IMG/VR virus record: IMGVR_UViG_3300017991_005548
Location: 1 to 64,000 of that record
DNA length: 64,000 nucleotides
Strand: one strand, 5' to 3'
Positions 1 to 30,596 of the stretch are shown here, one piece after another. The notes below the pieces were generated by a model. The model did not search any database. It saw nothing but the letters and a program-made list of their open reading frames with translations, and was not told the origin of the DNA. Both the position numbers and the translations under genes were made by a program. Every line of letters starts with the position of its first letter. The stretch's first letter is position 1.

Positions 1-3000
1 ATAATTTTCAGAAGAGCTACTGGATTCGCTTTTTGAGCTTGAAGATTCTGACTGAGATGAAGAACTTTCAGAATAATTTTCAGAAGAACTACTGGATTCG
101 CTTTGCGAACTTTCTGATTGAGACGACTCACTCTGAGATGATTCTGATTGAGAACTACTTGACTCAGAATAATTTTCTGATGAACTCGAACTTCTTGAGC
201 TTTCGCTTTGCGAACTATCTGATTGTGATGAGCTTGACTCAGATTGAGATGAAGAACTCTCAGACTGAGAACTTATACTCTCTGTAAAAAGCGCACACTC
301 TTCATATACATAATTAATGTTCTCAGTTGAACTACTAGACGATTCTGATTGACTACTACTTGACTCCGATTGAGAACTACTCGACTCCGATTGAGAACTA
401 CTTGATTCTGATTGAGATGAAGAACTCTCAGAATAGTTTTCTGAAGAACTTGACGATTCAGATTGGCTACTGCTTGATTCACTCTGAGATGAAGACGATT
501 CAGATTGAGACGATTCACTCTGAGATGAGGATGATTCAGATTTGGAACTACTTGATTCTGATTGAGATGATTCACTCTGAGATGACTCTGATTTACTGCT
601 ACTTGATTCACTTTCAGATTGAGAACTCTCGGACAAAGATGAACTTGACTCGCTTTGAGAACTTTCACTCTGAGAGCTACTGGACTCGCTTTGAGATGAG
701 CTTGATTCAGACTGAGAACTTTCAGATTGAGAACTAGAGCTTTCTGATTGGCTACTGGAACTTTCAGATTGAGATGAACTCGATTCAGATTGAGATGATT
801 CACTTTGGCTACTTTCGCTTTGTGAACTGCTTGATTCTGATTGACTACTTGAACTCTCTGATTGAGATGACTCACTCTGAGAACTAATACTCTCGGTAAA
901 TAAATCACAAAGTGCGTACTCAAAATTAACATTCTCAGTTGAACTACTTGAACTTTCACTTTTTGAACTAGAGCTTTCGGAGACTGAGCTTTCGGAGACT
1001 GAGCTTTCAGAATAATTCTCAGAACTTGTACTTGACGATTCTGAATAATTTTCACTTGAAGTCGATGAACTTTCAGAACTCGCAGAATAAACTTCGCTTG
1101 AAGTCGATGAACTTGAATCCTTGGAAGAACTTGAACTTGAATCCTTGGAAGAACTTGAAGAACTTACAGGACAAACTCCAGGTTCTAGTGTTGGAGCAGG
1201 AGGAGTCCCAGAAATTACAAACCATTCCAATGAACTCGGTGACACCCATGGTTCTGTTGAGGCCGTATTATATGCAGAAGTACCTCCTAGAACATCAGAC
1301 ATTACCCATTTACTTGAATCTGAGAAATATAAGAACCTAGATCCGTTGTAATAATATGTTGTATCATTATGTACTCCAGCTATCTGGTAATTTCCATTAA
1401 ATGATATGTCTCCAGCAAGCTCAACACAAATAGTTCCTGGCAGATTCCCACTAGAAATTGAAGAACTTGAAGAAAACTGCTCTGAACTACTTGAACTTCC
1501 TGATGACTCAGAACTATTTGAATATTGTTCTGATGAACTACTTGATTCAGATTTGGAACTAGACGATTCTGATTGAGATGAGGAACTTTCTGACTGGGAT
1601 GATTCTGACTGTGAAGACTCGCTCTGAGAACTGCTGGATTCACTTTGGCTACTAGAACTTTCACTCTGGGAACTGCTAGATTCTGATTGGCTACTGTCAG
1701 ACTGGGAGCTTTCGCTTTGAGAACTTTCAGATTGCGAACTAGAAGATTCACTGTCACTCTGGGACGAATCGCTCTTTGAACTACTAGATTCGCTTTGAGA
1801 TGATTCGCTTTGAGATGATTCGCTTTGAGATGATTCAGATTGGGAACTCTCACTTTGACTAGATGATGATTCAGATTTACTACTGCTTGATTCAGACTGG
1901 GAACTTTCTGACTGACTGCTACTCGATTCACTCTGAGAGGAGGAACTTTCTGACTGAGAACTCTCGGATTGAGACGACTGAGAAGATTCTGATTGAGAGC
2001 TTGAGCTTTCTGACTGGGAGCTATCACTTTGGCTACTGCTACTCTCTGACTGAGAAGATTCAGATTGTGAACTACTTGATTCAGATTGTGAACTACTTGA
2101 TTCAGATTGTGAACTGCTACTCTCTGACTGAGATGATGAGCTTTCTGATTGAGAACTTTCAGATTTACTACTGCTCGATTCACTTTGGGAAGACTCAGAT
2201 TTGGATGATTCAGATTGGGATGATGAACTCTCTGATTTTGAACTACTGGATTCGGATTGAGACGATTCACTCTTACTACTACTGGACTCGCTTTGAGAGC
2301 TTTCGGATTGAGACGAAGAACTTTCAGACTGCGATGATGAACTCTCGGATTGAGATGACTCAGATTGGGAACTCTCAGATTGTGAGCTAGAAGACTCGCT
2401 ATCACTCTGGGACGACTCAGATTGGGAACTGCTAGACTCAGACTTACTACTCTCAGATTGAGACGATTCTGACTGTGAACTTTCACTTTGAGAACTACTT
2501 GATTCACTTTGAGAGGATGAACTCTCGGACTGACTACTCTCACTCTTTGAACTACTTGACTCTGATTGGGACGACTCACTCTTTGAACTACTTGACTCTG
2601 ATTGGGACGACTCACTCTGAGACGATTCCGACTGTGAACTTTCACTTTGAGAACTGCTTGATTCTGATTGAGAACTTTCGGACTGACTACTTTCACTCTT
2701 TGAACTACTTGATTCACTCTGAGATGATTCACTCTGAGATGATTCACTCTGAGATGATTCACTCTGAGAGCTACTTGATTCCGATTGAGAACTCTCACTT
2801 TGAGAACTTTCAGAATGCGCCAAACTTGAAGTTGATGAACTTGAATCCTTGGAAGAACTTGAACTTGAATCCTTGGAAGAACTCGAAGAGCTTACAGGAC
2901 AAATTCCGTTCTCTGTTACTGGGGCTGGAGGAGTTCCATTATCAACAAACCAAGACAAATACCCAGGACCAATCCAAGGGGGAACTAAGTTTGTACTATA

Positions 3001-3798
3001 CGCAGATACCCCTCCAAGAGTCGTTGACAATGTCCATCTACTAAGATTCGAATAAAATAGAAATCTTGATCCACTGGAATAATAAACTGTCTCATTGTAA
3101 ATGCCAACAGCACTGTAAGTAGCATTATAAGAAGTATCTCCAGCATGTTCCACACAAACATCATCTATCAAACCGCCACTAGAAATTGAAGAACTTGAAG
3201 AAAACTGCTCTGAACTACTTGATTCAGATTGAGATGAGGAGCTTTCACTATATAGTTGAGATGAGGAGCTACTTTCACTTGACTCACTTGAGATACTTCT
3301 GGAACTATCGGAATAATTCTCTGATGAACTTGACTCGCTTGAGATACTACTTGAACTCTCAGATGATCCAGAGCTAACACTATATTGTTCTGAACTACTT
3401 GAGCTACTTTCACTAGAGCTACTATCACATAAAGTTGGGAGACGAACAATAGTTATTGAAGGCCAAACGCCTGTTGTAGTTTGAGCATCAATAAATGTTT
3501 GAACCTGTGGTATTGTTGGGTCAGGAGTTATGATATCTGTGAACACCCAAGCATATTCACAACGAACATCATTAATTGATCTGTCAACATTGCCATCAAA
3601 ATCAGCATCAGGTATCTCAGGAAGTCTAGCAACAGTTATCGATGGCCAAACGCCTGTTGCTGTTTGAGCATCAACAAAATCTTGAACCTGAGCTATACTT
3701 GGGTTAGGAGTAAATTGATCTACAAAAACCCAAGCATAATAAATACGAACATCATTTATAGTGATGTCTTTGTCATTGTCGAAATCTGCACAACCCAT
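1..3798 (-). CDS. Giant Ser-rich modular protein (>1266 aa, runs off the window start) with N-terminal tandem dockerin-like repeats; not in the ORF track
   Basis: ATG at 3798-3796 after AGGAAAATAAA gives MGCADFDNDKDITINDVRIYYAW...DADFDGNVDRSINDVRCEYAW..., paralogous to the N-terminus of 3810..7037. The same frame reads SESSQ-type repeats down to position 1 (...SESSSSSENY). It holds two copies of a ~90 aa Cys-bounded domain (~2895-3170, ~1165-1445) and two STENxNxxYxxCxxFTESISSQ motifs (~270-330, ~880-940). Frame spot-checked, not translated end to end. Confidence 0.85.
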   Translation of the reverse strand, partial: MGCADFDNDKDITINDVRIYYAWVFVDQFTPNPSIAQVQDFVDAQTATGVWPSITVARLPEIPDADFDGNVDRSINDVRCEYAWVFTDIITPDPTIPQVQTFIDAQTTTGVWPSITIVRLPTLCDSSSSESSSSSSEQYSVSSGSSESSSSISSESSSSENYSDSSRSISSESSESSSSSQLYSESSSSQSESSSSEQFSSSSSISSGGLIDDVCVEHAGDTSYNATYSAVGIYNETVYYSSGSRFLFYSNLSRWTLSTTLGGVSAYSTNLVPPWIGPGYLSWFVDNGTPPAPVTENGICPVSSSSSSKDSSSSSSKDSSSSTSSLAHSESSQSESSQSESSSSQSESSQSESSQSESSQSESSSSKSESSQSESSQSESSSSQSESSQSESSQSESSQSESSSSKSESSQSESSSSKSESSQSESSSSQSESSSSQSESSQSESSQSESSKSESSSSQSESSQSDSESSSSQSESSQSESSQSESSSSQSESSSSQSESSQSESSSSKSESSQSESSSSKSESSSSQSESSKSESSQSESSSSKSESSQSESSSSQSESSSSQSESSSSQSESSSSQSESSQSESSSSQSDSSQSESSSSQSESSQSSQSESSQSESSSSQSESSSSQSESSQSESSSSKSESSSSQSESSQSESSQSESSQSESSQSESSSSKSDSSQSDSESSSSQSESSQSESSQSDSSQSESSSSQSESSSSQSESSSSQSESSQSESSQSESSSSQSESSSSKSESSSSSEQYSNSSESSGSSSSSEQFSSSSSISSGNLPGTICVELAGDISFNGNYQIAGVHNDTTYYYNGSRFLYFSDSSKWVMSDVLGGTSAYNTASTEPWVSPSSLEWFVISGTPPAPTLEPGVCPVSSSSSSKDSSSSSSKDSSSSTSSEVYSASSESSSTSSENYSESSSTSSENYSESSVSESSVSESSSSKSESSSSSTENVNFEYALCDLFTESISSQSESSQSESSSSQSESSSSQSESSQSESSQSESSSSQSESSSSQSESSSSQSESSQSESSSSQSESSSSQSESSQSESSSSLSESSQSESESSSSKSESSQSESSQSESSSSKSESSSSQSESSQSESSSSQSESSSSQSESSSSSENYSESSSSQSESSSSQSESSSSQSESSSSQSESSSSSTENINYVYEECALFTESISSQSESSSSQSESSSSQSDSSQSESSRSSSSSENYSESSSSQSESSQSESSQSESSQSESSSSSENYSESSSSQSESSSSKSESSSSSENY

Positions 3799-3809
3799 TT
3801 TATTTTCCT

Positions 3810-6800
3810 TTAACTACTCGAACTTGATGAAAACAAGTTCGAACTTGATGACGACACATTATTGAATGACTCTGAGCTAGAACTCTTAACCATCGCGTTT
3901 GTGCAATCAAACTCAATATCTTCAAAACTTTCAATCTGGAAGAAATTAATAATCGTATAAGTATGATATCCTGGGACCGTCCCTCCCAAATAAGAACCTG
4001 TAAAATTCGTTGGACCACCTTGATTAACAAGTGTCATTCTTGCTGTGATACTAGGATTCTCTACAGGGTCTATCCTATTAATTGGTATATGCACTGCCGC
4101 TACCGTCTTGACAGGACTTATATCATAATTATAATTGTATGTGAAACTATCTCCCCCATTAAATGACACGCTATCAGAAGCTATCTCCTCAGTTTCAGAT
4201 CCTGGCTCCAAATAAGTAAGAAGAACGGATAGTTGTTTCAAACATTGTGCGTCAAGTGAACTCGATGAACTATCATCAGAATATCCCTCGGACGAACTCT
4301 CTGAATAACTCGATGAACTCTCTGAATATTGCTCAGATGAAGAACTAGAGCTACTTGAATCACTTGAATTGCTCTGAGACGATTCAGATTGAGAACTCTC
4401 TGATTGTGATGACTCAGATTGAGAACTGCTGGACTCACTTTGGGAACTTTCAGATTGAGAACTATCACTCTGAGAACTGCTGGATTCAGATTGAGAACTC
4501 TCAGATTGAGAACTGGAAGACTCAGACTTAGAGGAAGAAGACTCACTCTCGGAACTTGAACTTTCTGAATATTGTTCAGAACTTGAACTTGACTCAGAAC
4601 TAACGGAACTAACAGAATATCCTCCAGATGACGATGAACTAGATGAGTCAATACTTGAGCTACTTGAGCTACTTGAACTACTGCTGTAATTAGCATTCGC
4701 ACATTCTTCACAATTGTTATAAATACTGTCAATGTTATGAGTAATTGGCTTGTCTACCAAACCAACTCTTTGGTAACAGACTCCATTTACGCTGATAAAT
4801 TCTGCTTCGGTATATGGAACAACTATATTTCCGTTCCATTCATCGATATCGAGTGCCGTAACAACGTCTTCTATTGGACATCCAAGACCATACAATCCAC
4901 TAGATGGTCCTGCAAAATTCAATCCTACAATCTTTAATTCTCCACCGACTTCAATCAATACAGTAGAACCTGAATCTCCTCCCTGCCCCATTCTTGTATC
5001 AGCACTATATAATATTTGGTCAGTAAAATATGCCTGTAAATTGGTTCCAGACCCATCTCCATAATTGACTGTTGCCGCAGTAAACTTCTGGGTCAATGTT
5101 GCAAAAGGAGGTGGAGTAATTCCTGTTGTTCTGCCACTCTTGTAAACTTGGTCCCCAATATTGTATTCAGATTTATTGGAAAATGCGAAAGGACCATGTC
5201 CAACTTCAAGGATATTAGTAGCCGCATCGTCAACATCAACTGAGAAAATCGCACAGTCTACTGAATTACTAGCAACTCCGCTTCCTCCGAACTTCATAGC
5301 TACGGCTCTTTTCACCTGACCCGCTCTATCAGTAGGAGAGACACCTCCATCATTTGGAGATGGCTGTAACATCCACAAACCAGTTGTATCGGTACTACCC
5401 TCTTCTCCAAGGAAGGCTTCCTCATAAACATGAGGGTCACTGTGGTTACTTGATATGTTCGAAAAGCTAAACTCTCCTCCACTGTAAATGACTGTAACAC
5501 TATGAGTATGAGGATTCGTAGTATCTGGATCGCCACCTGACAACAACGATCCTCCAGATGAAACAACAACACTAGAAGATATCCCATCTATCAAATTCCC
5601 AGCCTGTTGCCCAGTTATTGTAACTAAATGATAATGGCTATATCCCCAAGATTCCCCTGTACTGAAATCAAGGAAAAAATAAGTTGTTGAATAAGGAGTT
5701 CTATAATCAGGATCATATTTCAGGCCAGCACAGTGATTATTAGTAAGTGCGACCAATGAATCGTCTGTAGTATCTTTTACAATAGCTCCAAGAGTACATG
5801 CTGTTCCACTTTCCTCTATGGCACTAATTCCTCCTTGAAGTGGTCTGTACTTTTCATCATGAGGAGGACATCCGCCACCAGCACCATCTTTACAACTTCC
5901 ATGAGCGAACAGTTTCTCAACTACAATAATATCTGTTTTGGTGTTAGTTGACAAACGCTCTGGAATAAGATCATTTTCGTCTAGCTCAGAAATATCAACT
6001 TTTCTCTCTACACCGACAACTACGCATGGTTCTCCAGTATCTACACCATCAACAATCTTAGTTCCTGCCATGGCCATAACAACATTAGCTTTTGGCGCTA
6101 TTTCAGCAACATACAATTCATTGGCATCTCTTTCTTCCTGACTATCATATTCAGGAGATCTTGGGACGGCTCTTGCCGTAGCTTGACTGAAACTCCTTGG
6201 ATTAGAGCACATTGTAAATTCAATATTACCATAGCTTGAAGAACTTGAAGAACTTGAAGAGTCTATCGATGAACTAGAACTGGAAGATTCTGAACTTTCA
6301 GATTGTGAACTTTCGGAATAACCTTCAGAAGAAGAACTAGAAGATTCTGAACTCAAACTCTGAGATGATTCAGAATATTGTTCAGAAGAAGAACTAGACT
6401 TACTTGAATCAGATTGTGAACTGTCAGAATAATTTTCGGAACTTGAGCTAGATTCGCTTGAAACGCTTTGTGAACTGTTAGATTGTGAACTGTCAGAGTA
6501 GCCTTGGCTAGACTTACTTGAATCAGACAATGAACTGTCAGATTGTGAACTGTCAGAATACTCTTCAGACGAACTTGACGAACTTGGAGAACTATCCGAA
6601 CTGACAGAACTTACAGAGTACTCTTCAGAAGAAGAACTTGAACTACTGTGACTAGAACTACTTTCACACAGAGTTGGAAGACGAACAATAGTTATTGAAG
6701 GCCAAACACCTGTTGCTGTCTGAGCATCAATAAACGCCTGAACTTGCGGTATTGTTGGATCAGGAAATGTAAGGTCTGTGAACACCCATGCAAAATAACA

Positions 6801-7037
6801 ACGGACATCATTGATTGTCCTACTTCCATTACCATCAAAATCAGCATCAGGGATTTCAGGAAGTATATCTGCGGTTATTGATGGCCAAACACCTGAAGCT
6901 GTTTGAGCGTCAATGAAATCTTGAACTTGGGATAATGTTGGATTTGGAAAATATCTATCCATGAAAACCCAAGCATAATAAACGCGAACGTCATTTATAT
7001 TCAAGTCAAAATTATGTTCGAAATCTGCACAACCCAT
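3810..7037 (-). CDS. Ser-rich modular protein: dockerin-like repeats, S1 (trypsin/Nal1-like) serine protease, Cys module, C-terminal Cys-bounded domain
   Basis: Catalytic triad motifs ALTNNHCA, VDCAIF, GQGGDSGS; prodomain-like segment GEPCVVVGVERKV...IP...TDIIVV; N-terminal DFEHNFDLNIND / DFDGNGSRTIND Ca-loop-like pair; poly-Ser linkers. Confidence 0.8.
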   Translation of the reverse strand: MGCADFEHNFDLNINDVRVYYAWVFMDRYFPNPTLSQVQDFIDAQTASGVWPSITADILPEIPDADFDGNGSRTINDVRCYFAWVFTDLTFPDPTIPQVQAFIDAQTATGVWPSITIVRLPTLCESSSSHSSSSSSSEEYSVSSVSSDSSPSSSSSSEEYSDSSQSDSSLSDSSKSSQGYSDSSQSNSSQSVSSESSSSSENYSDSSQSDSSKSSSSSEQYSESSQSLSSESSSSSSEGYSESSQSESSESSSSSSSIDSSSSSSSSSYGNIEFTMCSNPRSFSQATARAVPRSPEYDSQEERDANELYVAEIAPKANVVMAMAGTKIVDGVDTGEPCVVVGVERKVDISELDENDLIPERLSTNTKTDIIVVEKLFAHGSCKDGAGGGCPPHDEKYRPLQGGISAIEESGTACTLGAIVKDTTDDSLVALTNNHCAGLKYDPDYRTPYSTTYFFLDFSTGESWGYSHYHLVTITGQQAGNLIDGISSSVVVSSGGSLLSGGDPDTTNPHTHSVTVIYSGGEFSFSNISSNHSDPHVYEEAFLGEEGSTDTTGLWMLQPSPNDGGVSPTDRAGQVKRAVAMKFGGSGVASNSVDCAIFSVDVDDAATNILEVGHGPFAFSNKSEYNIGDQVYKSGRTTGITPPPFATLTQKFTAATVNYGDGSGTNLQAYFTDQILYSADTRMGQGGDSGSTVLIEVGGELKIVGLNFAGPSSGLYGLGCPIEDVVTALDIDEWNGNIVVPYTEAEFISVNGVCYQRVGLVDKPITHNIDSIYNNCEECANANYSSSSSSSSSSSIDSSSSSSSGGYSVSSVSSESSSSSEQYSESSSSESESSSSKSESSSSQSESSQSESSSSQSDSSQSESSQSESSSSQSESSQSESSQSESSQSNSSDSSSSSSSSEQYSESSSSYSESSSEGYSDDSSSSSLDAQCLKQLSVLLTYLEPGSETEEIASDSVSFNGGDSFTYNYNYDISPVKTVAAVHIPINRIDPVENPSITARMTLVNQGGPTNFTGSYLGGTVPGYHTYTIINFFQIESFEDIEFDCTNAMVKSSSSESFNNVSSSSSNLFSSSSSS

Positions 7038-7051
7038 TTTGTATTTTCCCT

Positions 7052-8578
7052 TTAGTTACTTGAAGTCGATGATGAAGACTCATTATTAAACGATTCTGAG
7101 CTAGAACTCTTTACCATAGCATTTGTGCAATAGAACCTAACTGAATTGAATTCCTCTATAAAATCAAAATTAACAAGCGAATACCTAGCATCATCCCCCG
7201 ATGATAAGAAATCAAGATATGAAGCAACATATGTTGTTTCAAACGTACTGTTCCTTCTAGTCATTCTAGTTGTTATTCCTAAATTCTGAGATGTATCTAA
7301 CCTGTTCTTATTAATAACAAATGATACAACTGTTTGTGTTGATGGGATGACTGCGGAATCAAAATTATAAGTAAAATAGCCATTCCCATTATAATCTACA
7401 CTATTAGATGTGAATGTATCTGAACCACCCTCAATATATTCTACTTCAATAGTTAATGGCTTGAGACATTCTGTGTCATCCAAAGAACTTGAACTACTTG
7501 ATGACTCACTGTAGTTCTCTGAGCTAGTTGAAGAACTAGACTCTGAATCTAAAATAACAGCAGAACTGGACGAACTATTAGACTGGGAACTTTCGCTTGC
7601 AGAAGATTCGCTTTGAGAAGAACTTGATTCGGACTTAGACGAACTTGACTCAGATTCCGAACTACTTGACTCAGATTCCGAACTACTAGATTCACTCTCT
7701 GAACTACTTGACTCTGAACTCTCCGACTGAGAGCTTGAACTTTGCGAACTTTCAGACTGTGATGATTCAGACTTGGAACTTTCAGACTGTGATGATTCAG
7801 ACTGTGATGACTCTGACTGTGAACTTTCAGATTGACTACTTGAACTCTCTGATTGTGAACTTTCGCTTTGAGAACTCTCACTTGCAGAACTTTCAGACTC
7901 AGAACTTTCAGACTCACTTGCAGAACTTTCAGACTCAGAACTTGAGGATTCAGAATAGTCTTCAGAAGAGGATGAAGATTCGCTTTCTGAACTACTTGAT
8001 TCTGAGGCCGAAGATTCGCTTTCTGAACTACTTGATTCGCTATTGCCCTCAGATGATGTACTTGAACTTGAGTCTAAAGAGGAGCTTGAACTTGATGTAG
8101 TTGAAGAACTTGATGAAGATACGTTATTAAAACTCTCTGAAGAACTAGACTCATCTGATATCAACTCTTCACTCGAACTTGAAGAACTTGAATCATAAAC
8201 AACAATATAACCAGTTTCTTGTTCCCCAGAAGTAGGATCTCTTAACGGAATCCATTCGTTGTCAAATAAATTCGTTGTTACAGTTCTATATTTGGGTACA
8301 TACCTTTTGATTGGTGGGTTGGGCTTTGTGATGAAAGGATCAGCATCTCCAACCTGAATTCTCACGATTTCTATGATATACCAAGCAGGAGAAAAACAAT
8401 ATCCACCATACTCATAATGGAATATCAAAATGTAAACTTTAGGAGTAACTTCGCCCGTAACGATGTCTGTGTCTTTCTTGATGTAGAACGGCTGGCCATC
8501 ATGAGTTCCTCTTAACTCATAAATACCATTAGCGTTTTCATCGCCAAAATCAATAGCGATTAGCTGGGGGAAAGACAT
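7052..8578 (-). CDS. Ser-rich modular protein sharing its C-terminal domain with 3810..7037
   Basis: CLKPL...FTYN...NRLD...ITTRMT...CTNAMVKSSSSESFNN aligns with CLKQL...FTYN...NRID...ITARMT...CTNAMVKSSSSESFNN; SD GGAG upstream. Confidence 0.8.
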   Translation of the reverse strand: MSFPQLIAIDFGDENANGIYELRGTHDGQPFYIKKDTDIVTGEVTPKVYILIFHYEYGGYCFSPAWYIIEIVRIQVGDADPFITKPNPPIKRYVPKYRTVTTNLFDNEWIPLRDPTSGEQETGYIVVYDSSSSSSSEELISDESSSSESFNNVSSSSSSTTSSSSSSLDSSSSTSSEGNSESSSSESESSASESSSSESESSSSSEDYSESSSSESESSASESESSESESSASESSQSESSQSESSSSQSESSQSESSQSESSQSESSKSESSQSESSQSSSSQSESSESSSSESESSSSESESSSSESESSSSKSESSSSQSESSASESSQSNSSSSSAVILDSESSSSTSSENYSESSSSSSSLDDTECLKPLTIEVEYIEGGSDTFTSNSVDYNGNGYFTYNFDSAVIPSTQTVVSFVINKNRLDTSQNLGITTRMTRRNSTFETTYVASYLDFLSSGDDARYSLVNFDFIEEFNSVRFYCTNAMVKSSSSESFNNESSSSTSSN

Positions 8579-8731
8579 GTTATTATCTCCAAAATCATAT
8601 GCAACAATTATTTAACAGATTAATTTTTAGAATGTTTTTTACAATCCTCTGACTATAATTGATATTCACGTTCTTAATAAATTCGCGTTTTGTCAACAAG
8701 AAACCTTTTCCAAAAGCAAAAAACTACTAAA

Positions 8732-9535
8732 TTACTCCTCATTAAAGAAGTCTGACTTAATAACTTTCATAATCCCTGTGTAACGAGACATGTTTTCGCG
8801 ATAATTATATGTTGATCGATTACTTAAAATTGCCCAGTTCTGAACCGTATCTATACTCCACTTATTTAAACAAGGAATAATAGGACCAGTGGCAATCGCA
8901 ATAACATACTTGACTTTCGTGGAGATATTACCAATTTGCATTAAATTTAAACCGTAATCCAAAGTACATGGGGCGGCACCACTATCAAGATGTCTTGTTA
9001 CTATGATCTTATAACGATCTTTTAGTCTATCTACAAAAGTATCAAAAGTACTGGCTGGTTTCTTGTATTGACCACTACATGCCCTTGAGTTGACCAACAA
9101 TATGTCGAAATCTTCTGGGATATCTTTATGCGCTCTTTCTAAAATCGATGGGTTGTTCATCAATATATCATCAACCTTAGTAAAAGGACAGTGAACTCCA
9201 ATTTCCTTTGACAACAATTGAAAATAGTCAAGGTAAATTTCATTCAAACAAAAAGCACCCTTATATCTCTTTCGTTTGAATGGTATACTCGCATACCAGG
9301 TGTTAACAGTTTTGTTCCCTGTTGATTTTTCATACCGTCTTCTTGCTTGCATTGTCCCCAGTTTAATGCGATCTTCCAAACCAACAATATGTGACTGAAG
9401 TTCTTTCTTGTACTTTTTCATTACATAGAAAATACAATTTACATCATCATTCTGAATGCAAAGGTTTCTCATGTAATGAATCTGATAGACACAATCTCCT
9501 AAATGACGACCATTATGGAAATAAATCTCTCTCAT
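8732..9535 (-). CDS. Putative glycosyltransferase (GT-B, GT9-like)
   Basis: N-terminal HLGD and C-terminal VIAIATGP segments resemble GT9 motifs. Confidence 0.45.
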   Translation of the reverse strand: MREIYFHNGRHLGDCVYQIHYMRNLCIQNDDVNCIFYVMKKYKKELQSHIVGLEDRIKLGTMQARRRYEKSTGNKTVNTWYASIPFKRKRYKGAFCLNEIYLDYFQLLSKEIGVHCPFTKVDDILMNNPSILERAHKDIPEDFDILLVNSRACSGQYKKPASTFDTFVDRLKDRYKIIVTRHLDSGAAPCTLDYGLNLMQIGNISTKVKYVIAIATGPIIPCLNKWSIDTVQNWAILSNRSTYNYRENMSRYTGIMKVIKSDFFNEE

Positions 9536-9537
9536 TT

Positions 9538-9858
9538 TTAGTAAGGCTCTTCAGGTGGAGCAGGAAAATCGTCTGTGTCTAATTCTTCAATTGATGGGTT
9601 AAATGCATTAAGAAATGCTTGTCTTTGCTCCAATGGAACATTTAAAAAATCCATACGTTCATCTGGAATCTTTAAAACAGCCCAACGGCCATCAATCATT
9701 TCTTTTGGGGCATCAGCCCATTTAGTTGTTGCCTGCGATTCTGGAGCAGGCTTTCCATTCTTATTTCCTATTACTGGGAATTGTGGAGAATTATTCAAAG
9801 CGTTTAAAGCCGCAATTGCAACATTCTCATCATCCCATACATAATAAAGCATTCCCAT
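9538..9858 (-). CDS. Hypothetical protein
   Basis: 106 aa ORF with AAGGAG SD. Confidence 0.7.
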   Translation of the reverse strand: MGMLYYVWDDENVAIAALNALNNSPQFPVIGNKNGKPAPESQATTKWADAPKEMIDGRWAVLKIPDERMDFLNVPLEQRQAFLNAFNPSIEELDTDDFPAPPEEPY

Positions 9859-9915
9859 TTTTTCTCTCCTTTAGAGTTTTGTTATTAATTCAAAAATCAG
9901 GAAGGGAATACCTAC

Positions 9916-9942
9916 AAAAAAGCCCCCAAAAAATGGGGGCTT
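9916..9942 (-). terminator. Intrinsic terminator ending the Thr/Lys tRNA operon
   Basis: AAGCCCCCA-TTTTT-TGGGGGC followed by U6 on the minus strand. Confidence 0.8.
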
Positions 9943-9996
9943 GAATTGCTATATGGGATATATTTTTAATTGGAAATATTACCCACATAGCAATAT

Positions 9997-10084
9997 TGGT
10001 GGAGCCGACAGGATTCGAACCTGCGCGGAGCTTGCGCTCTCTTGATTAAAAGTCAAGTACCTTCAGCCACTCGGTTACGACTCC
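9997..10084 (-). tRNA. tRNA-Lys(UUU) with a long variable arm (88 nt)
   Basis: GGAGTCG/CGGCTCC acceptor, CTTGA-CTTTTAA-TCAAG anticodon arm, GAGC-GCAA-GCTC variable hairpin, GCAGG-TTCGAAT-CCTGT T arm, ACCA end. Confidence 0.85.
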
Positions 10085-10086
10085 AA

Positions 10087-10962
10087 TTAAATTATTCCAT
10101 AACTTCTCGCCCATTTACGAATTGTATTACATGTTACCCCATATTTTTTACCAATAGCAACCCAAGTCATCTTATCTATCATGTCTTTTAGCTCTTCTTT
10201 AGATGGGCGATTCTGAACCTTACGACGACTTGGCAACTTACCATTACATGAAGTACATCTGGTGCTTCTATGCTCAATTGCTTTGTTGCAATCTACACAT
10301 CTATTTGTTTTTTCTTCCTCTAGCTTTTTAACATATTCCTCTATGGTTGTTTCAATTTTACAGTTTGCACATTTGTCCTTAATGACATTTTTGATCTGGG
10401 CAACAACCATTTTTCTATGCTTTTTGTCAAGCTTATTGTATTTAGACCACCTGATTCTATATACGAACCATCCATTGTCTTCCAAATATTTATTTCTACG
10501 CTTATCACTTTTTATTATTTTTTCATCGCAATAATGTTGCTCTCCATCGATTTCTATGTCTATTTTTCTTATTGGATCAGAGAAATCGAGTTGATATGTG
10601 CCAACTCTGTGATGGTATATTAACTCTATATTCTCATTTCTAAATAACTTCTCAAAATATTTTTCTGGGTACGACATTCCTTTGCTATGATGGTTAAGTA
10701 AATACGGGACTTTATCTGGATTTTCTTTAAGAAACTTTCTTCTTGCCTTACTAATCTTTTCTTTTGTTTTCTCTGACAGTTTTCTGGGTTTTAGTTTACA
10801 ACTTAATTTCATGGCACTCGATCTTTCTCTTGATACAAAATCTCCTCGTTTTCTGGCAGACGTAATTGCCGCCATACTAACTCCAAATTCCTCAATAACT
10901 TCTCTCCATGTATGTCCTTCGTCATAAAACTTCTGAATTTCAATCCAATTGTATCTAGGCAT
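10087..10962 (-). CDS. Free-standing putative homing endonuclease (DUF559/Vsr-like PD-(D/E)xK with HTH and Cys4 zinc modules)
   Basis: YQLDF...IDIEIDGEQH...DKRRNKYLEDNGWFVYRIRW; NUMOD-like LSEKTKEKISKA; CVDC...CTSC; lies between two complete tRNA genes. Confidence 0.75.
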   Translation of the reverse strand: MPRYNWIEIQKFYDEGHTWREVIEEFGVSMAAITSARKRGDFVSRERSSAMKLSCKLKPRKLSEKTKEKISKARRKFLKENPDKVPYLLNHHSKGMSYPEKYFEKLFRNENIELIYHHRVGTYQLDFSDPIRKIDIEIDGEQHYCDEKIIKSDKRRNKYLEDNGWFVYRIRWSKYNKLDKKHRKMVVAQIKNVIKDKCANCKIETTIEEYVKKLEEEKTNRCVDCNKAIEHRSTRCTSCNGKLPSRRKVQNRPSKEELKDMIDKMTWVAIGKKYGVTCNTIRKWARSYGII

Positions 10963-11051
10963 AACAACACTCCTTTTTAGTTGTATTGTTATGTATTTCT
11001 AGATAAGTATAGCAACATCCTTTGAGAAATTGGACTTTTATGGTTCAAATT

Positions 11052-11128
11052 TGGTGGGCTGGGTGGGACTTGAACCCACGACCAACGGAGTAAGAATCCG
11101 CGACTCTATCCAACTGAGTTACCAACCC
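11052..11128 (-). tRNA. tRNA-Lys(CUU)
   Basis: Cloverleaf; anticodon arm GCGGA-TTCTTAC-TCCGT; ACCA end. Confidence 0.9.
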
Positions 11129-11133
11129 ATTTT

Positions 11134-11208
11134 TGGTGGACCTGGAGAATTTTGAAATCTCGACCAACGGATTAAAAGTCCGCGACTCTGCCTCTGAGTT
11201 ACAGGTCC
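11134..11208 (-). tRNA. tRNA-Lys(UUU)
   Basis: GGACCTG/CAGGTCC acceptor; GCGGA-CTTTTAA-TCCGT; atypical T arm GAGAT-TTCAAAA-TTCTC; ACCA end. Confidence 0.85.
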
Positions 11209-11263
11209 AAAGTGAGAGAGCATATCTACTTCGAAGACTTAACAATATGCTTTTAAACTCTCT

Positions 11264-11339
11264 TGGAGCCGCCTGACGGAATTGAACCGACATCCTCTGA
11301 GTACAAAACAGAGATAATAATCCTTTATACTAAGGCGGC
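11264..11339 (-). tRNA. tRNA-Thr(UGU)
   Basis: GCCGCCT/AGGCGGC acceptor; loop TTTGTAC closed by a U-U pair; TCCA end. Confidence 0.85.
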
Positions 11340-11345
11340 GTCATA

Positions 11346-11417
11346 AGCCCTTGCCCAGCAACGATCTGGGACTAATCCCTTACGAGGGGATAGTTCTGCC
11401 AATTAAACTACAAGGGC
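11346..11417 (-). tRNA. tRNA-Thr(CGU), CCA not encoded
   Basis: GCCCTTG/CAAGGGC acceptor; ATCCC-CTCGTAA-GGGAT; atypical T loop ATCGTTG. Confidence 0.75.
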
Positions 11418-11445
11418 ATCTTACTTAAATTTTCAAAGATCATTC

Positions 11446-11520
11446 TGGAGCATCCAATCGGACTCGAACCGATAACCCCCTCCTTACCATGGAGGAATTC
11501 TACCATTGAACTATGGATGC
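11446..11520 (-). tRNA. tRNA-Thr(GGU)
   Basis: GCATCCA/TGGATGC acceptor; CCTCC-ATGGTAA-GGAGG; TCCA end. Confidence 0.9.
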
Positions 11521-11528
11521 ATAGGCAC

Positions 11529-11562
11529 AAAAAAACCCGAAGTCTTTATCGGACTTCGGGTT
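11529..11562 (-). terminator. Attenuator terminator upstream of the Thr/Lys tRNA genes
   Basis: 9-bp stem CCCGAAGTC/GACTTCGGG, 7-nt loop, U7 tract ending 8 nt before tRNA-Thr(GGU). Confidence 0.9.
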
Positions 11563-11584
11563 GGTCAGTATCTTTACGTTCAGG

Positions 11585-11662
11585 TCAAGACAACAAACCT
11601 CCCGAAGCCACGCGTTTCTTCGTGGTTTTGGTTGTTTTAGTTGTCTTGGTTGTAGCGTACAT
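11585..11662 (-). CDS. Thr/Lys-rich attenuator leader peptide MYATTKTTKTTKTTKKRVASGGLLS (25 aa)
   Basis: AAGGA SD upstream; 13 consecutive Thr/Lys codons; contains antiterminator segment GCTTCGGG (11601-11608) complementary to the terminator 5' arm. Confidence 0.85.
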   Translation of the reverse strand: MYATTKTTKTTKTTKKRVASGGLLS

Positions 11663-11734
11663 TTTTAAAATTCCTTATCTTCATTTAATTGAAGTTTATG
11701 AGCATTGTTCATTAAACTCGCTCAAGTTACCCCT

Positions 11735-11762
11735 ATTATAAGCTATGTTTGGAGCTTTTCAA
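11735..11762 (-). promoter_or_regulatory. sigma70-type promoter of the Thr/Lys tRNA operon
   Basis: TTGAAA-N16-TATAAT followed by AGGGGTAAC. Confidence 0.75.
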
Positions 11763-11786
11763 GCGCAACTGAGATTTTTTTTGAAA

Positions 11787-12995
11787 TTATGGACAAGTCT
11801 CGTTTCCAACAGTAGGAACGTATGATGGCGCACCTTTCCATCCTGCCCAAGTATCAGTTCCAACACCATTAGCTTGGAGTGCATCCCACTTAATGGTCAA
11901 ATTACCATATGACCCCAAACTAGAAGCATCAAATGTAACGAATGTAAAACTGCTATTGGGAATAACTGTGGTTGAAGTTAGTGTACCTACATAAACTCCA
12001 GCAGAAATCCTGTTGTTATATTGAGAGTTTGTTCCCAAATTGATCCATACATGATGGTAAATATTGCTTCTTAAATAACAAGCAACTTTTTGAAATGTGG
12101 AATAAGATCCGCCAATTCTTAATTGCATTGATCCATTATAAGTGTTATTCCAAGATTCTGCTGGACTATTGCTATACGTACCTGGACATATTATTTTTGA
12201 TTCTCCATTGTACCATGAGACGAATCCTGTCCCATCATGCAACCAGTTAATGCTGTTTGCCGTTCCAGTCCAACAAAGAGTAACTTTCATTCTAGGATCT
12301 GAATTCCCCCCACACATAATTTTGGGCAATGGAGGTCCATCACTTTCTGAAGAACTTGAGGAACTATCTGGAGGTAAACCAGAACTGGAAGATTCAGAGT
12401 ATGAACTCTCAGAGTATGAACTGGAAGATTCAGAGTATGAAGATTCAGAATATGAACTGGATGATTCAGAATATGAACTTTCGGAGTATGAACTGCTAGA
12501 CTCTGAAGAATTGCACCCTCCTTCACATACTTCTATTACTTCTCCCTCTGTGTAATTTAGATATGCTCCTGGAGTTGCTAAGACAATTGCATCCTCACTA
12601 CCCCAATTTGTATAAGTCCCTTCATCAAATCCATTAATACAGACAGTTCCCTCTGAGATATTGCCAAAAAGAGTTGGTGGAGAAAACCAAAGGGTATTTT
12701 TAACTTCTGATATCCCACCAATTGTTACGTTAACACATTCAATAGAGCTTGAAGAAGATGGTGCGGCCAAAGATTCTGAAGAAGATGATCCTCCACCAAA
12801 AGACTCTGAAGATTCAGACAAAAGGCTCTCGGAGGAAGAGCTTGCGAGTTCACAAGCCAAACAGGAATCAAAAGTACCCTCAATCTCAAATGGGAAAGCA
12901 TTTCTTGGTTTTGTTGTTTCACCAGAGAATTTGTAACATTGACCATCTATCTTTATAGATGATCCTTGATAATCATCAAATACTTTGCTTGACAT
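11787..12995 (-). CDS. Cys-module family protein with Ser/Tyr repeat linker
   Basis: N-terminal DYQGSSIKIDGQCY...FDSCLACEL module; SYSESS(S) repeats; middle Cys-bounded domain shared with 23521..24087. Confidence 0.8.
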   Translation of the reverse strand: MSSKVFDDYQGSSIKIDGQCYKFSGETTKPRNAFPFEIEGTFDSCLACELASSSSESLLSESSESFGGGSSSSESLAAPSSSSSIECVNVTIGGISEVKNTLWFSPPTLFGNISEGTVCINGFDEGTYTNWGSEDAIVLATPGAYLNYTEGEVIEVCEGGCNSSESSSSYSESSYSESSSSYSESSYSESSSSYSESSYSESSSSGLPPDSSSSSSESDGPPLPKIMCGGNSDPRMKVTLCWTGTANSINWLHDGTGFVSWYNGESKIICPGTYSNSPAESWNNTYNGSMQLRIGGSYSTFQKVACYLRSNIYHHVWINLGTNSQYNNRISAGVYVGTLTSTTVIPNSSFTFVTFDASSLGSYGNLTIKWDALQANGVGTDTWAGWKGAPSYVPTVGNETCP

Positions 12996-13060
12996 AATTG
13001 GGATTCCAGCACATTTTGTTTCGAAATATTTTTCTTTGTGCTATACCCAAATACCTGCAA

Positions 13061-13252
13061 TTATTTTTTGGATCGTTCCCTATTTAACGACTCTCTAAGG
13101 GAATAAGTGTCGAAGGCCATGACCGAAATCATTTCAAGCATTACTTGATCCAAAGGCTTATAGCCACCTTTATACAATTTTAGTAAACTCTCTACGTGAT
13201 AATTATGTTTGGCGATTCTCTCCAATTCCCCTAACAGCTTCCTCTTCCTCAT
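13061..13252 (-). CDS. Hypothetical protein
   Basis: 63 aa ORF overlapping the upstream gene. Confidence 0.5.
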   Translation of the reverse strand: MRKRKLLGELERIAKHNYHVESLLKLYKGGYKPLDQVMLEMISVMAFDTYSLRESLNRERSKK

Positions 13253-13652
13253 TTGTACCAGCCATTAGTTTAATCCTTTTCTTTGTTTTCTCGATAACGT
13301 CAGCAAACTTTGAACCCCCAAAAGGGCAATAGTGACATTCCATGTCTTTATTCCTCATTTCCCTCATCATAACCTTTGCTCCACGCAAATTTAATGAGTG
13401 AACAATGATAGATAATTTCTTATTTGGAGTCTCATGAAGTCGTCTTGCAACAGTAGCCCCAGTATTAAATTCATCACTATCTACATACTGTCTTCCCTCA
13501 AGATCATGATCTAGGAAAATATAGTCATACTTATTGGTATTTAGCCACTCCATTGCAAGGTCAACTTGGTCAGTAATGTCTAACTGACATGGTAAATGCT
13601 CTCTAAAAATTGCGATTCTTCTTGGGTCATCTTCCAGGATAAAAACTCTCAT
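13203..13652 (-). CDS. Receiver-fold protein of the cyclic-phosphate-processing receiver type
   Basis: ILEDD...IFLDHDL...TG...IIVHSLNxxG motif pattern. Confidence 0.65.
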   Translation of the reverse strand: MRVFILEDDPRRIAIFREHLPCQLDITDQVDLAMEWLNTNKYDYIFLDHDLEGRQYVDSDEFNTGATVARRLHETPNKKLSIIVHSLNLRGAKVMMREMRNKDMECHYCPFGGSKFADVIEKTKKRIKLMAGTNEEEEAVRGIGENRQT

Positions 13653-30594: not shown

Positions 30595-30596
30595 CC

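What the first reader, a model, noticed from the sequence alone, without database searches (positions are those of the whole stretch)
1..7037. Unannotated >1266-aa mucin-like protein and its neighbour both start with dockerin-like repeats
Seen: the real gene at 3798..<1 is missed by the ORF track because it has no stop in the window. It and 3810..7037 begin MGCADF with two ~60-aa repeats, each DFxxxxxxxINDVRxx(Y/F)AWVF...QVQxF(I/V)DAQTxxGVWPSIT. Long SESSQ/SSSSE tracts separate small Cys-bounded domains. Established: dockerins are duplicated Ca-binding loop-helix units that bind cohesins, and serine-rich repeat adhesins are O-glycosylated stalks. Inference: a second attachment module for very long, acidic, probably glycosylated filaments assembled in the cytoplasm (no signal peptide).
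Basis: partly seen in the sequence, partly recalled or inferred. Interest (0 to 1): 0.62.

Follow-up and report, generated by a model that had tools for sequence, protein, structure and literature searches.

The report
Dockerin-like anchors on megaphage mucin fibres
Two neighbouring genes of a giant (about 0.5 Mb) marine bacteriophage encode very long, acidic, half-serine "mucin-like" proteins that each begin with a doubled calcium-loop module predicted to fold like a bacterial dockerin, which suggests the virus mounts long sticky fibres with a cellulosome-style plug.

Summary
Window 1..3798(-) is an open 1266-codon frame cut by the contig end. A 99.98%-identical 476-kb IMG/VR record (from a 524.7-kb metagenome contig) shows the full gene encodes 2527 aa, 49% Ser. 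This gene and its neighbour 3810..7037(-) both start MGCADF, followed by two 62-aa repeats (66% identical, E 1e-22). Paralogue dN/dS is 0.20.

The "dockerin-like" call holds up:
- Each repeat has a 12-residue D1..D12 calcium-type loop plus helix.
- An AlphaFold2 model built on 11 relatives has pLDDT 94.9.
- An unbiased scan of 48,161 PDB chains puts dockerins at ranks 1-11 (Z 5.8-3.6).
- ESM-Atlas shape hits are Dockerin_1 clusters.
- The family profile hits almost only dockerins in PDB sequences.
- One relative matches Pfam Dockerin_1 within the module.

It is not a canonical dockerin: it has 125 aa and four helices, sits at the N-terminus, has no signal peptide, gets no Pfam hit itself, and no Pfam cohesin was found. 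The family is rare (about 12 relatives among 1.84 billion representatives) and phage-linked.

The genome is a tailed megaphage with a nonulosonic-acid and glycosyltransferase island nearby.

Anchoring, calcium binding, glycosylation and virion location remain inferences. The partner is unknown.

The parts
1..3798 (-). P1: first 1266 codons of a 2527-aa Ser-rich (49% Ser, pI about 4) fibre-like protein, truncated by the contig end. Full gene = L002:10001-17584(+).
3424..3798 (-). P1 dockerin-like double module (aa 1-125). Predicted helices at 14-27, 35-48, 75-90 and 96-109. Cys3, Cys80 and Cys124.
3751..3786 (-). P1 Ca-type loop 1 (aa 5-16, DFDNDKDITIND). Asp at positions 1, 3, 5, 7 and 12; Thr at 9.
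3568..3603 (-). P1 Ca-type loop 2 (aa 66-77, DFDGNVDRSIND). D1, D3, N5, D7, S9, D12.
2899..3156 (-). P1 Cys-bounded domain copy 1 (Cys215-Cys300), unknown fold. There are five copies in the genome: three in P1 and two in the 4276-aa giant.
1171..1428 (-). P1 Cys-bounded domain copy 2 (Cys791-Cys876).
1429..2898 (-). Longest Ser tract inside the window (aa 301-790), made of SESSQ/SESSSSQ/SESSSSK units.
883..939 (-). 19-aa single-Cys island (TENVNFEYALCDLFTESIS), one of 8 copies in full-length P1. A second copy lies at window 271..327.
3806..3810 (-). AAGGA Shine-Dalgarno-like motif, overlapping the P2 stop codon, 7 nt upstream of the P1 ATG.
3810..7037 (-). P2: 1075-aa protein. Architecture: dockerin-like module, Ser tract, S1-type serine protease region, Ser tract, C-terminal X domain.
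6663..7037 (-). P2 dockerin-like double module (aa 1-125). Loops DFEHNFDLNIND and DFDGNGSRTIND.
4710..6209 (-). P2 protease region (aa 277-776). Matches phrog_20754 'protease' (3e-37) and, weakly, Pfam Nal1. Contains TNNHC (His435) and GDSGS (Ser689) motifs.
3894..4247 (-). P2 C-terminal X domain (aa 931-1048), unknown fold, about 43% identical to the P3 X domain. Ends ..CTNAMVKSSSS.
7048..7052 (-). AAGGG Shine-Dalgarno-like motif, overlapping the P3 stop codon, 10 nt upstream of the P2 ATG.
7052..8578 (-). P3: 508-aa protein. Architecture: unique N-terminal domain (8216..8578), Ser tract, X domain (7118..7459). First gene of the three-gene run.
28937..51411 (-). Candidate glycosylation island; its link to the fibres is inferred, not shown. 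Genes: Maf/MptE-like and sialyltransferase-like (28937-30247); methyltransferases (31698-32414, 44917-46152); GT2 (32384-33175, 43114-43788); sulfotransferase (39671-40612); NeuB (40609-41310); CMP-sugar cytidylyltransferase (41285-41911); GT4-like (47132-48058); Glyco_trans_1_2 (50320-51411).

Best explanation
P3, P2 and P1 form a translationally coupled operon of a marine tailed megaphage (at least 476-525 kb). They encode modular appendage proteins built from globular domains strung on long, polyanionic, Ser-rich spacers that are probably O-glycosylated.

P1 (2527 aa) and P2 (1075 aa) each start with a 125-aa, internally duplicated, expanded variant of the dockerin fold. The module has two 12-residue Asp/Asn calcium loops, each followed by a helix (F-hand), plus one extra helix per repeat.

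The most likely role of this module is a Ca2+-dependent plug that fixes the N-terminal end of the fibre to a protein receptor on the virion or on a partner subunit. The distal domains then reach out to bind or process host-surface or particle material. These are a ConA-like Laminin_G_3 lectin and three Cys-bounded domains in P1, and an S1-type protease in P2.

Shown here:
- gene structure
- the repeat and its purifying selection
- the predicted fold and its similarity to dockerins
- phage identity
- glycosylation genes in the neighbourhood

Inferred:
- Ca2+ binding
- partner binding
- virion location
- glycosylation
- the idea that docking and a possible Cys3-Cys124 clasp are completed only in Ca2+-rich, oxidising seawater
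For: Fold and sequence:
- The AF2 model on alignment A1 has pLDDT 94.9 and pTM 0.88, with four helices.
- VIA-align against 48,161 PDB representatives puts dockerins at ranks 1-11: Z 5.8 for 8ajy_D (80/84 aligned), 5.4 for 2vn5_B (56/56, 2.2 A), 5.4 for 3ul4_B (62/63), 5.2 for 4dh2_D (70/70). Unrelated folds start at Z 3.6 or below.
- Foldseek gives no significant hit, but dockerins have TM (by target) of 0.55-0.67.
- ESM Atlas by shape: 4 of the top 8 rows are Dockerin_1 clusters.
- The A1 profile against PDB sequences: 10 of 12 hits are dockerins, plus the double-dockerin module of a C. thermocellum serine protease. E-values are 0.006-0.3, and all matches run through the loop and helix.
- Pfam Dockerin_1 hits relative P0014 inside the module at 23.3 bits (cutoff 22.9) and P0012 at 18 bits. 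P0011 scores 38.4 bits, with its best stretch in additional N-terminal loops.
- All family loops are 12 residues with D1 invariant and D12 nearly invariant. The Asp/Asn coordination pattern matches type I dockerins (PMC12484212, section 3.1).

Selection: dN/dS is 0.20 at dS 0.73 between the P1 and P2 modules.

Phage and virion context:
- A portal protein matches phrog_16240 at 1.6e-47.
- Relative P0008 (module, TP-linker, beta-helix-like C-terminus) lies directly upstream of a gp13-like head-tail adaptor and close to a gp21-like prohead protease in TARA contigs.
- Relative P0005 lies near a terminase.
- L001 repeats the arrangement of an X-ending gene followed by an MGCADF gene.

Other domains and context:
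- Distal domains: Laminin_G_3 at 7e-18 and protease phrog_20754 at 3e-37.
- Glycosylation island.
- Many other proteins of the genome use Ser-rich spacers between NHL, LamG-like and LRR-like domains.
Against: - Pfam Dockerin_1 does not hit P1 or P2 themselves.
- Structural Z-scores are modest; the tool warns that Z below 8 can reflect a common helical arrangement.
- The fold is a prediction from an 11-sequence alignment.
- The module is twice the size of a dockerin and is N-terminal, whereas most cellulosomal dockerins are C-terminal (own knowledge).
- No Pfam Cohesin was found in the 476-kb genome, and no partner was identified.
- Virion association is not shown. The locus is about 220 kb from the portal gene on our contig and has no recognised structural neighbour except the distant phrog_10356-like paralogues at 14.5-20 kb.
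- Cytoplasmic Ca2+ is normally too low for dockerin folding.
Confidence: 0.55

Rival explanations
1. Head-to-tail daisy chain. The ~115-aa X domain at the C-terminus of P3 and P2 is the cohesin-like receptor of the dockerin-like module at the N-terminus of the next protein. P3-X would bind Doc-P2, and P2-X would bind Doc-P1, giving one composite fibre of about 4100 residues anchored through the P3 N-domain. This is a specific sub-case of the best explanation.
For: Doc and X each occur exactly twice in the 98%-complete genome, in the order [..X][Doc..X][Doc..]. The only related locus with flanks (L001, a different JGI sample) again has an X-ending gene immediately followed by an MGCADF gene. 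The short SD-coupled junctions suggest stoichiometric co-expression.
Against: There is no independent evidence that X binds anything. The X fold is unknown: no PDB sequence hit, only a sub-threshold Pfam Ig_TgrO1 hit, and no further relatives. More distant Doc-bearing proteins (P0006, P0008, P0009) carry other C-terminal domains. Only one comparative locus is available.
Confidence: 0.15
2. The module is a Ca2+-dependent structural or sensor domain with no dedicated protein partner. This would resemble the many non-cellulosomal dockerin-like or EF-hand-like modules, for example a Ca2+-triggered stabiliser of the N-terminus or a direct binder of host-surface polysaccharide.
For: No cohesin was detected. 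The similarity to dockerins is concentrated in the Ca loop plus helix. Several relatives are stand-alone 124-159-aa proteins (P0005, P0012, P0014, P0016). EF-hand Pfam models give weak hits on relatives.
Against: The whole-domain superposition covers complete dockerins, not just one loop. The N-terminal position on very long fibres, and P0008's place beside neck genes, favour an attachment role. The 66% internal symmetry mirrors the symmetric binding face of type I dockerins (PMC12484212).
Confidence: 0.15
3. The proteins are not virion parts. They would instead be released at lysis or act on or in the infected cell, for example as an extracellular polyanionic matrix or decoy, or as a protease and lectin that remodel the cell surface. 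The Doc-like module would tether them to a host structure.
For: The locus lies among auxiliary genes (tRNAs, glycosylation island, nucleic-acid enzymes) rather than next to recognised head or tail genes. No structural PHROG hit exists for P1-P3.
Against: There is no signal peptide or membrane segment. The same Ser-spacer architecture is used by many very large proteins of this genome that resemble receptor-binding or adhesin proteins. Relatives sit in structural modules.
Confidence: 0.12
4. Artefact: the long open frame is a by-product of non-coding repetitive DNA or of misassembly.
For: The contig breaks inside the repeat, and several overlapping alternative-frame ORFs exist in the tract.
Against: - The frame links conserved globular domains (Doc, three Cys-bounded domains, LamG) over 7.6 kb.
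- Ser codons are mixed as in the rest of the genome, and DNA repeats are short and degenerate.
- dN/dS is 0.20.
- The sequence is identical in independent contigs.
Confidence: 0.01

Closest known systems
Type I dockerin modules of cellulosomes (Pfam PF00404; e.g. PDB 2vn5_B, 3ul4_B, 4dh2_D, 5nrk_B) and the longer Ruminococcus flavefaciens dockerins (8ajy_D)
   Same: Both are tandem duplications of a 12-residue Asp/Asn Ca-type loop followed by a helix, with Asp at loop position 12. The predicted module superposes on whole dockerins (Z 5.8-4.5). The two halves have high internal symmetry. The module is appended by a flexible linker to catalytic (protease) or binding (lectin) domains, as in cellulosomal subunits. 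The termini are flanked by residues that could clasp (Cys3/Cys124; compare the intramolecular clasp of PMC3821032).
   Different: - Each repeat is 62 aa with an additional helix and an extended G-x-W-P-x-I-T..LP segment, giving 125 aa against about 60-85.
- It is N-terminal, has no signal peptide, and is phage-encoded.
- It gets no Pfam hit itself.
- Gly at loop position 6 is replaced in both P1 loops and in P2 loop 1; only P2 loop 2 keeps it.
- No cohesin was found in the genome.
Canonical EF-hand pairs (calmodulin-like)
   Same: Both have a 12-residue loop with oxygen ligands at positions 1, 3, 5, 7, 9 and 12, and paired sites. Weak EF-hand Pfam hits occur on relatives.
   Different: Position 12 is Asp, not Glu. 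There is no entering helix before loop 1, which starts at residue 5. The structural neighbours are dockerins, not EF-hand proteins.
Phage T4 fibritin (wac) and other virion-mounted fibres or decorations
   Same: Both are long appendages fixed by an N-terminal anchor. Relative P0008 occupies the slot just upstream of a gp13-like neck gene. In T4 that slot holds wac (gene order from my own knowledge).
   Different: There is no coiled coil or foldon and no sequence similarity. The anchor here is a Ca-loop module and the shaft is a disordered Ser-rich polyanion.
Serine-rich repeat adhesins of Gram-positive bacteria (Fap1, GspB, SraP) and mucins
   Same: Both have very long Ser-rich, probably O-glycosylated stalks separating binding domains, with glycosyltransferases encoded nearby.
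   Different: There is no aSec-type signal peptide and no LPXTG anchor. The units are SESSQ/SESSSSQ rather than S-x dipeptides. The proteins are strongly acidic and encoded by a phage.
Polyserine linkers of marine polysaccharide degraders (Saccharophagus degradans, Teredinibacter turnerae; PMC2386152, PMC2699552)
   Same: Ser-rich flexible spacers join modular carbohydrate-binding or catalytic domains in a marine setting.
   Different: Those linkers are tens of residues long, whereas these reach about 500 in P1 and about 1200 in the 4276-aa protein. Here they contain regular Glu and Gln.

Membership tests
Dockerin (type I, Pfam PF00404) | Tandem duplicated segment, each with a 12-residue Ca-binding loop followed by a helix | tested here: met
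   Two repeats, 66% identical. Loops lie at aa 5-16 and 66-77, followed by predicted helices 14-27 and 75-90.
Dockerin (type I, Pfam PF00404) | Asp/Asn (oxygen ligands) at the coordinating loop positions, with Asp at position 12 | tested here: met
   P1 loops: D,D,D,(D),T,D and D,D,N,(D),S,D. P2 loops: D,E,N,(D),N,D and D,D,N,(S),T,D. D1 is invariant and D12 at least 90% conserved in A1. This is a sequence pattern only; actual Ca2+ binding was not measured.
Dockerin (type I, Pfam PF00404) | Scores above the Pfam gathering threshold | tested here: not met
   No Dockerin_1 hit for P1 or P2 at E<=1, nor in a six-frame scan of the 476-kb genome. Distant relatives do hit: P0014 at 23.3 bits inside the module; P0011 at 38.4 bits, mostly in other loops.
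Dockerin (type I, Pfam PF00404) | Three-dimensional fold superposable on solved dockerins | tested here: met
   Ranks 1-11 of 48,161 chains are dockerins, Z 5.8-3.6, covering 56/56 to 80/84 target residues. Atlas shape hits are Dockerin_1 clusters. This rests on a predicted model and Z is modest.
Dockerin (type I, Pfam PF00404) | Compact ~60-85-aa module (loop-helix, short helix, loop-helix) | tested here: not met
   The module has 125 aa and four long helices. One extra helix and an extended segment are added per repeat.
Dockerin (type I, Pfam PF00404) | Binds a cohesin module | tested here: inconclusive
   No Pfam Cohesin match in the 476-kb genome. The host genome is unknown. The one complex prediction gave no verdict. 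Binding itself cannot be tested with these tools.
Dockerin (type I, Pfam PF00404) | Borne by a secreted protein (signal peptide) | tested here: not met
   The N-terminus MGCADFDNDKD is polar and acidic with no hydrophobic h-region. Judged by inspection only.
Canonical EF-hand | Helix-loop-helix with Glu at loop position 12 | tested here: not met
   Asp is at position 12 in all four loops. Loop 1 begins at residue 5 with no entering helix.
Serine-rich repeat adhesins (SRRP, aSec-exported) | Long N-terminal signal peptide and C-terminal LPXTG wall anchor | tested here: not met
   There is no signal peptide. Full-length P1 ends EQYFGDGFEE and P2 ends in poly-Ser.
Serine-rich repeat adhesins (SRRP, aSec-exported) | O-glycosylated Ser-rich repeat regions | not testable with these tools
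   Ser content is 49-52%. A phage-encoded NeuB, cytidylyltransferase, GT2, GT4 and sulfotransferase island lies nearby. No modification data exist.
S1 (chymotrypsin-like) serine protease (P2 middle region) | His and Ser catalytic motifs in family-typical context | tested here: inconclusive
   Matches phrog_20754 'protease' at 3e-37. Pfam Nal1_C and Nal1_N hits are below cutoff. TNNHC (His435) and GDSGS (Ser689) are present, but the catalytic Asp was not located.

The most novel reading that the evidence does not exclude
A virus particle uses a cohesin-dockerin-type, Ca2+-gated plug-and-socket system to assemble its appendages. An expanded phage-specific dockerin at the N-terminus of each fibre subunit would dock onto a so far unrecognised socket: the X domain of the preceding subunit, or a capsid or neck protein. 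This would yield a modular 'virion cellulosome' that displays a lectin, a protease and glycosylated polyanionic stalks, and that locks only in Ca2+-rich, oxidising seawater after lysis.
Probability: 0.15. Interest if true: 0.8.

Novelty: new variant of a known kind. Interest (0 to 1): 0.56.

Why it matters
Dockerin-cohesin pairs are the textbook high-affinity connectors of bacterial cellulosomes and a widely used tool in synthetic biology. An expanded, N-terminal, phage-specific version mounted on 1000-2500-residue mucin-like proteins would extend this connector principle to virus architecture.

It would also give a concrete handle on what the huge, unannotated, low-complexity genes of megaphages do. 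The handle is a 125-aa domain that can be expressed, tested for Ca2+ binding and used as bait.

The family is invisible to Pfam, PHROGs and NCBIfam and is very rare, so these genes are otherwise annotated as nothing.

Tried and rejected
- Circular join. Joining the contig ends keeps P1's frame open for 161 more codons. I rejected this as chance: the 476-kb contig shows a different continuation, and the next gene differs.
- Family scans of the module. Pfam, PHROGs and NCBIfam gave nothing meaningful. tblastn against GenBank phages gave no hit. The word-index protein search gave none.
- Single-sequence AF2 was useless, with pLDDT 37.6.
- Exhaustive HMMER hits to Big_5/ice-binding giants (P0007, P0010, P0015) and to P0013, P0017 and P0018 were judged spurious or unverified, and were left out of the alignment.
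- Complex prediction of X(P2) + 2 Ca + Doc(P1) gave ipSAE 0.21, below the 0.32 mark. This is 'no verdict', neither support nor evidence against.
- Pfam Cohesin, Gp23 and Terminase_6C scans of the 476-kb genome gave no hits. The Gp23 control rang nowhere, so that scan is uninformative.
- BFVD viral structures gave no match.
- X domain: no PDB sequence hit, no further relatives, no Atlas hit.
- Cys-bounded domain: no Pfam or PDB hit, and only sub-threshold Atlas leads.
- Further related loci. The viral and metagenome scans with A1 or A3, the P1 module and the P2 protease returned only this virus; the A1 viral scan could not run. Portal-based relatives are 4-22% complete fragments lacking the locus.
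- Read laying joints inside Ser tracts are cross-mapping of repeats, not real rearrangements.
- Literature searches found no description of such a module on phage fibres.
- Slips. Searches had wrong frame coordinates. One search named a family not held. Alignment A4 contained a stray one-residue row and was replaced by A5.
- No alternative genetic code was needed or used.

Full report
**What is there**

The window is the first 64 kb of a 296,327-bp single-contig virus record. GC content is about 38% and almost all genes lie on the minus strand. The window carries 11 tRNA genes.

Frame 1..3798(-) starts with ATG and stays open for 1266 codons to the contig end. The next gene upstream on that strand, 3810..7037(-), encodes 1075 aa. 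The one before it, 7052..8578(-), encodes 508 aa. I call them P1, P2 and P3.

The junctions are near-identical. Each has a stop codon overlapping an AAGGA/AAGGG Shine-Dalgarno-like motif, then 7-10 nt, then ATGGGTTGTGCAGATTTC. The MGCADF starts are therefore real, and the three genes look translationally coupled. A terminator-like hairpin lies upstream at 9942-9920.

**The truncated gene completed**

An IMG/VR contig of 476,248 bp matches window 1..13798 at 99.98% identity and carries the whole gene: L002:10001-17584, 2527 aa, 48.8% Ser, 395 acidic against 56 basic residues. CheckV rates this contig 98% complete, and IMG/VR classes it as 'provirus'. The same locus sits in a 524,692-bp metagenome contig, so the IMG/VR record is a trimmed version of it.

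Downstream of P1 that genome continues with replication-type genes absent from our contig. Our contig is therefore a fragment that broke inside the Ser repeat. The in-frame continuation obtained by circularising it is coincidence.

Logan contigs of three studies (sediment and seawater metagenomes; one may be the source) reproduce window 3300-7100 without differences.

A portal protein (phrog_16240, 1.6e-47) confirms a tailed phage. Other phage-type genes include exonuclease V/RecD, PhoH and a Lon-like protease.

**Anatomy of the three proteins**

- **P1:** Doc-like module (aa 1-125). Ser tracts made of SESSQ, SESSSSQ and SESSSSK units (167 in all). Three copies of an ~86-aa domain bounded by two invariant Cys (Cys215-Cys300, Cys791-Cys876, and a third copy beyond the window). 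Eight copies of a 19-aa single-Cys island. A Laminin_G_3 (ConA-like lectin) domain at 7e-18. A Ser-rich tail.
- **P2:** Doc-like module, Ser tract, protease region, Ser tract, then a ~115-aa C-terminal domain that I call X. The protease region matches phrog_20754 at 3e-37, has weak Nal1 hits, and contains TNNHC and GDSGS motifs.
- **P3:** a unique N-terminal domain, a Ser tract, and an X domain about 43% identical to that of P2.

Ser codons in the tracts follow genome-wide usage, and DNA-level repeats are short and degenerate. The repetition is therefore maintained at the protein level.

Ser-rich spacers are a genome-wide habit of this phage. A 4276-aa, 52%-Ser protein has an NHL-repeat N-terminus and two more copies of the Cys-bounded domain. 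Several other proteins of roughly 800-1500 aa have LamG-like or LRR-like domains.

**The N-terminal module**

The two 62-aa repeats are 66% identical (E about 1e-22). The P1 and P2 modules are 76% identical. The module occurs only in these two genes of the 476-kb genome. Between the paralogues dN/dS is 0.20 at dS 0.73.

Pfam, PHROGs, NCBIfam, GenBank-phage tblastn and the word-index search found nothing. I therefore ran the exhaustive HMMER search once. It returned 15 hits in 1.84 billion representatives. Nine are convincing two-repeat relatives, and two more came from a profile search.

All share the same layout: a Cys, then a 12-residue loop D-[FY]-x-x-[DN]-G-x-[LIV]-x-x-x-D, an aromatic helix, N-P-T-x-x-Q-V-Q, a second helix, and ..L-P. 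Position 1 of both loops is invariant Asp, and position 12 is Asp in at least 90% of sequences.

**Is it dockerin-like?**

Four independent lines of evidence say yes.

1. Pfam Dockerin_1 matches relatives of the module. P0014 scores 23.3 bits (cutoff 22.9) and P0012 scores 18 bits, both inside the module's second loop. P0011 scores 38.4 bits, with its best stretch in extra N-terminal loops.
2. A profile of the 11 modules searched against all PDB sequences returns almost only dockerins. The E-values are marginal (0.006-0.3), and the matches always run through the loop plus helix.
3. With that alignment AlphaFold2 gives a confident model (pLDDT 94.9, pTM 0.88), against 37.6 without it. An all-against-all structural scan of 48,161 PDB representatives puts dockerins at ranks 1-11 (Z 5.8-3.6). 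These matches cover whole dockerins, from 56/56 to 80/84 residues. Unrelated folds follow at Z 3.6 or below. Foldseek gives no significant E-value, but dockerins are the only hits with TM (by target) of 0.55-0.67.
4. The ESM Atlas shape search returns four Dockerin_1 clusters among the top eight rows.

The loop chemistry (Asp/Asn ligands, Asp at position 12) and the internal symmetry match the description of type I dockerins in PMC12484212 (section 3.1).

There are also clear differences. The module has 125 aa and four long helices. It is N-terminal and has no signal peptide. P1 and P2 score nothing with Pfam's model. No Pfam cohesin was found in the genome. BFVD has no similar viral structure.

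I therefore file it as an expanded dockerin-like (F-hand pair) module, not as a Pfam-level dockerin.

**Context that bears on function**

- Relative P0008, from TARA Oceans contigs, consists of the module, a TP-linker and a beta-helix-like C-terminus. It sits directly upstream of a gp13-like head-tail adaptor or head-closure gene and close to a gp21-like prohead protease. In T4 the slot before gene 13 holds wac, the neck whisker (gene order from my own knowledge).
- Relative P0005 is in a contig with a terminase.
- P0004 is 48% identical, starts MGCADF and has a Ser-rich tail. It follows a gene ending in an X domain (L001). This is the same X-then-Doc order as in the window.
- Within the window, 25-50 kb away, lies a glycosylation island. 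It contains NeuB, a CMP-sugar cytidylyltransferase, a Maf/MptE-like and sialyltransferase-like protein, GT2 and GT4-type transferases, a sulfotransferase and methyltransferases. It could decorate Ser tracts, but that link is inference.

**Most likely mechanism** (confidence about 0.55)

P1 and P2 are fibre or hair subunits. Their N-terminal Ca2+-loop module plugs into a protein socket on the virion or on a partner subunit. The polyanionic, probably glycosylated Ser tracts act as long flexible spacers. The distal lectin, Cys-bounded domains and protease engage host-surface or particle material.

Dockerins need Ca2+, and the module is flanked by conserved Cys3 and Cys124. Dockerin termini commonly form a clasp (PMC3821032). 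Final locking may therefore occur only in Ca2+-rich, oxidising seawater. This is speculation.

**Rival readings**

- **Daisy chain through X::Doc (0.15).** It is supported only by copy number and by synteny in two loci. The single complex prediction gave no verdict and is not counted either way.
- **A Ca2+-dependent structural or sensor module without a protein partner (0.15).**
- **A non-virion role (0.12).**
- **Artefact (0.01).**

**Limits**

All structural statements rest on a predicted model from a shallow alignment, and the Z-scores are modest. No experiment, proteome or micrograph is available. The host is unknown. Comparative data are thin: the family is rare, and related megaphage contigs are fragments.

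Read laying was given 3,801 letters. No alternative genetic code was invoked. The costly representative search was used once, after the word search and family scans had left the module open.

Noticed in passing
window 28937-51411 (-): Large phage-encoded glycosylation island. It contains NeuB (8e-33), a CTP_transf_3 cytidylyltransferase, a Maf/MptE-like and sialyltransferase-like protein, GT2 (two genes), GT4-like, Glyco_trans_1_2, a sulfotransferase (3e-21) and two SAM methyltransferases. They are interspersed with ~240-270-aa proteins that have no family hit.
   Followed up: partly
G000:C1:261791-274621 (-) = L032: A 4276-aa protein, 52% Ser. It has an N-terminal NHL-repeat domain (1.8e-18), two small ~65-aa repeats, two copies of the same Cys-bounded domain as P1, and a ~375-aa C-terminal domain. 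It has no Doc-like module, so it must be anchored differently.
   Followed up: partly
L002:10001-17584 (full P1); window 883-939 and 271-327: Eight copies of a conserved 19-aa island with a single Cys (TENVNxEYAxCDLFTESIS) are spaced along the Ser tracts. The unpaired Cys could form inter-chain disulfides, which would be mucin-like cross-linking.
   Followed up: no
window 14524-20104 (-): Six tandem ~290-330-aa ORFs lie here. The two that were scanned (14524-15510 and 15510-16469) match phrog_10356 'virion structural protein' (up to 8e-35).
   Followed up: partly
window 9997-11520 and 25592-26853 (-): Two tRNA clusters with 11 genes: Lys x3, Thr x3, Ile(TAT), Val(TAC) x2 and Ala x2. The tRNA-Lys at 9997-10084 is unusually long at 88 nt.
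   Followed up: no
window 20147-20704 (-): A 185-aa protein with an RF-1-domain (peptide chain release factor-like) PHROG hit (phrog_19918 at 5.5e-44; phrog_20323).
   Followed up: no
whole record; Ga0180433_10000003 (L026): The 296-kb 'genome' is a fragment. The same virus is a 476-kb IMG/VR 'provirus' record cut from a 524.7-kb metagenome contig. The provirus call may be a trimming artefact for a megaphage of over 0.5 Mb.
   Followed up: partly
G001:C1:202378-205916 (L007): A few genes downstream of P1 (beyond the window) lie a 150-aa protein starting MGCEWTNGETKEICG and two ~510-530-aa paralogues. The paralogues carry a KI(D/N)G(I/V)CY(N/K)YIGE motif that resembles the FISVNGVCYQRVG segment after the P2 protease.
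   Followed up: no
G000:C1:109266-111578 (L015): A Lon-like ATP-dependent protease (phrog_4871, 1.9e-207) is encoded by the phage.
   Followed up: no
P0011, P0019, P0020 (marine metagenome proteins): A sub-branch of the module family carries four Ca-type loops plus a Cys-rich C-terminal region (..CYNxxREEYPxACKxPF..). In P0011 the two N-terminal loops are the ones that Pfam Dockerin_1 recognises best, which bridges canonical dockerins and the phage module.
   Followed up: partly
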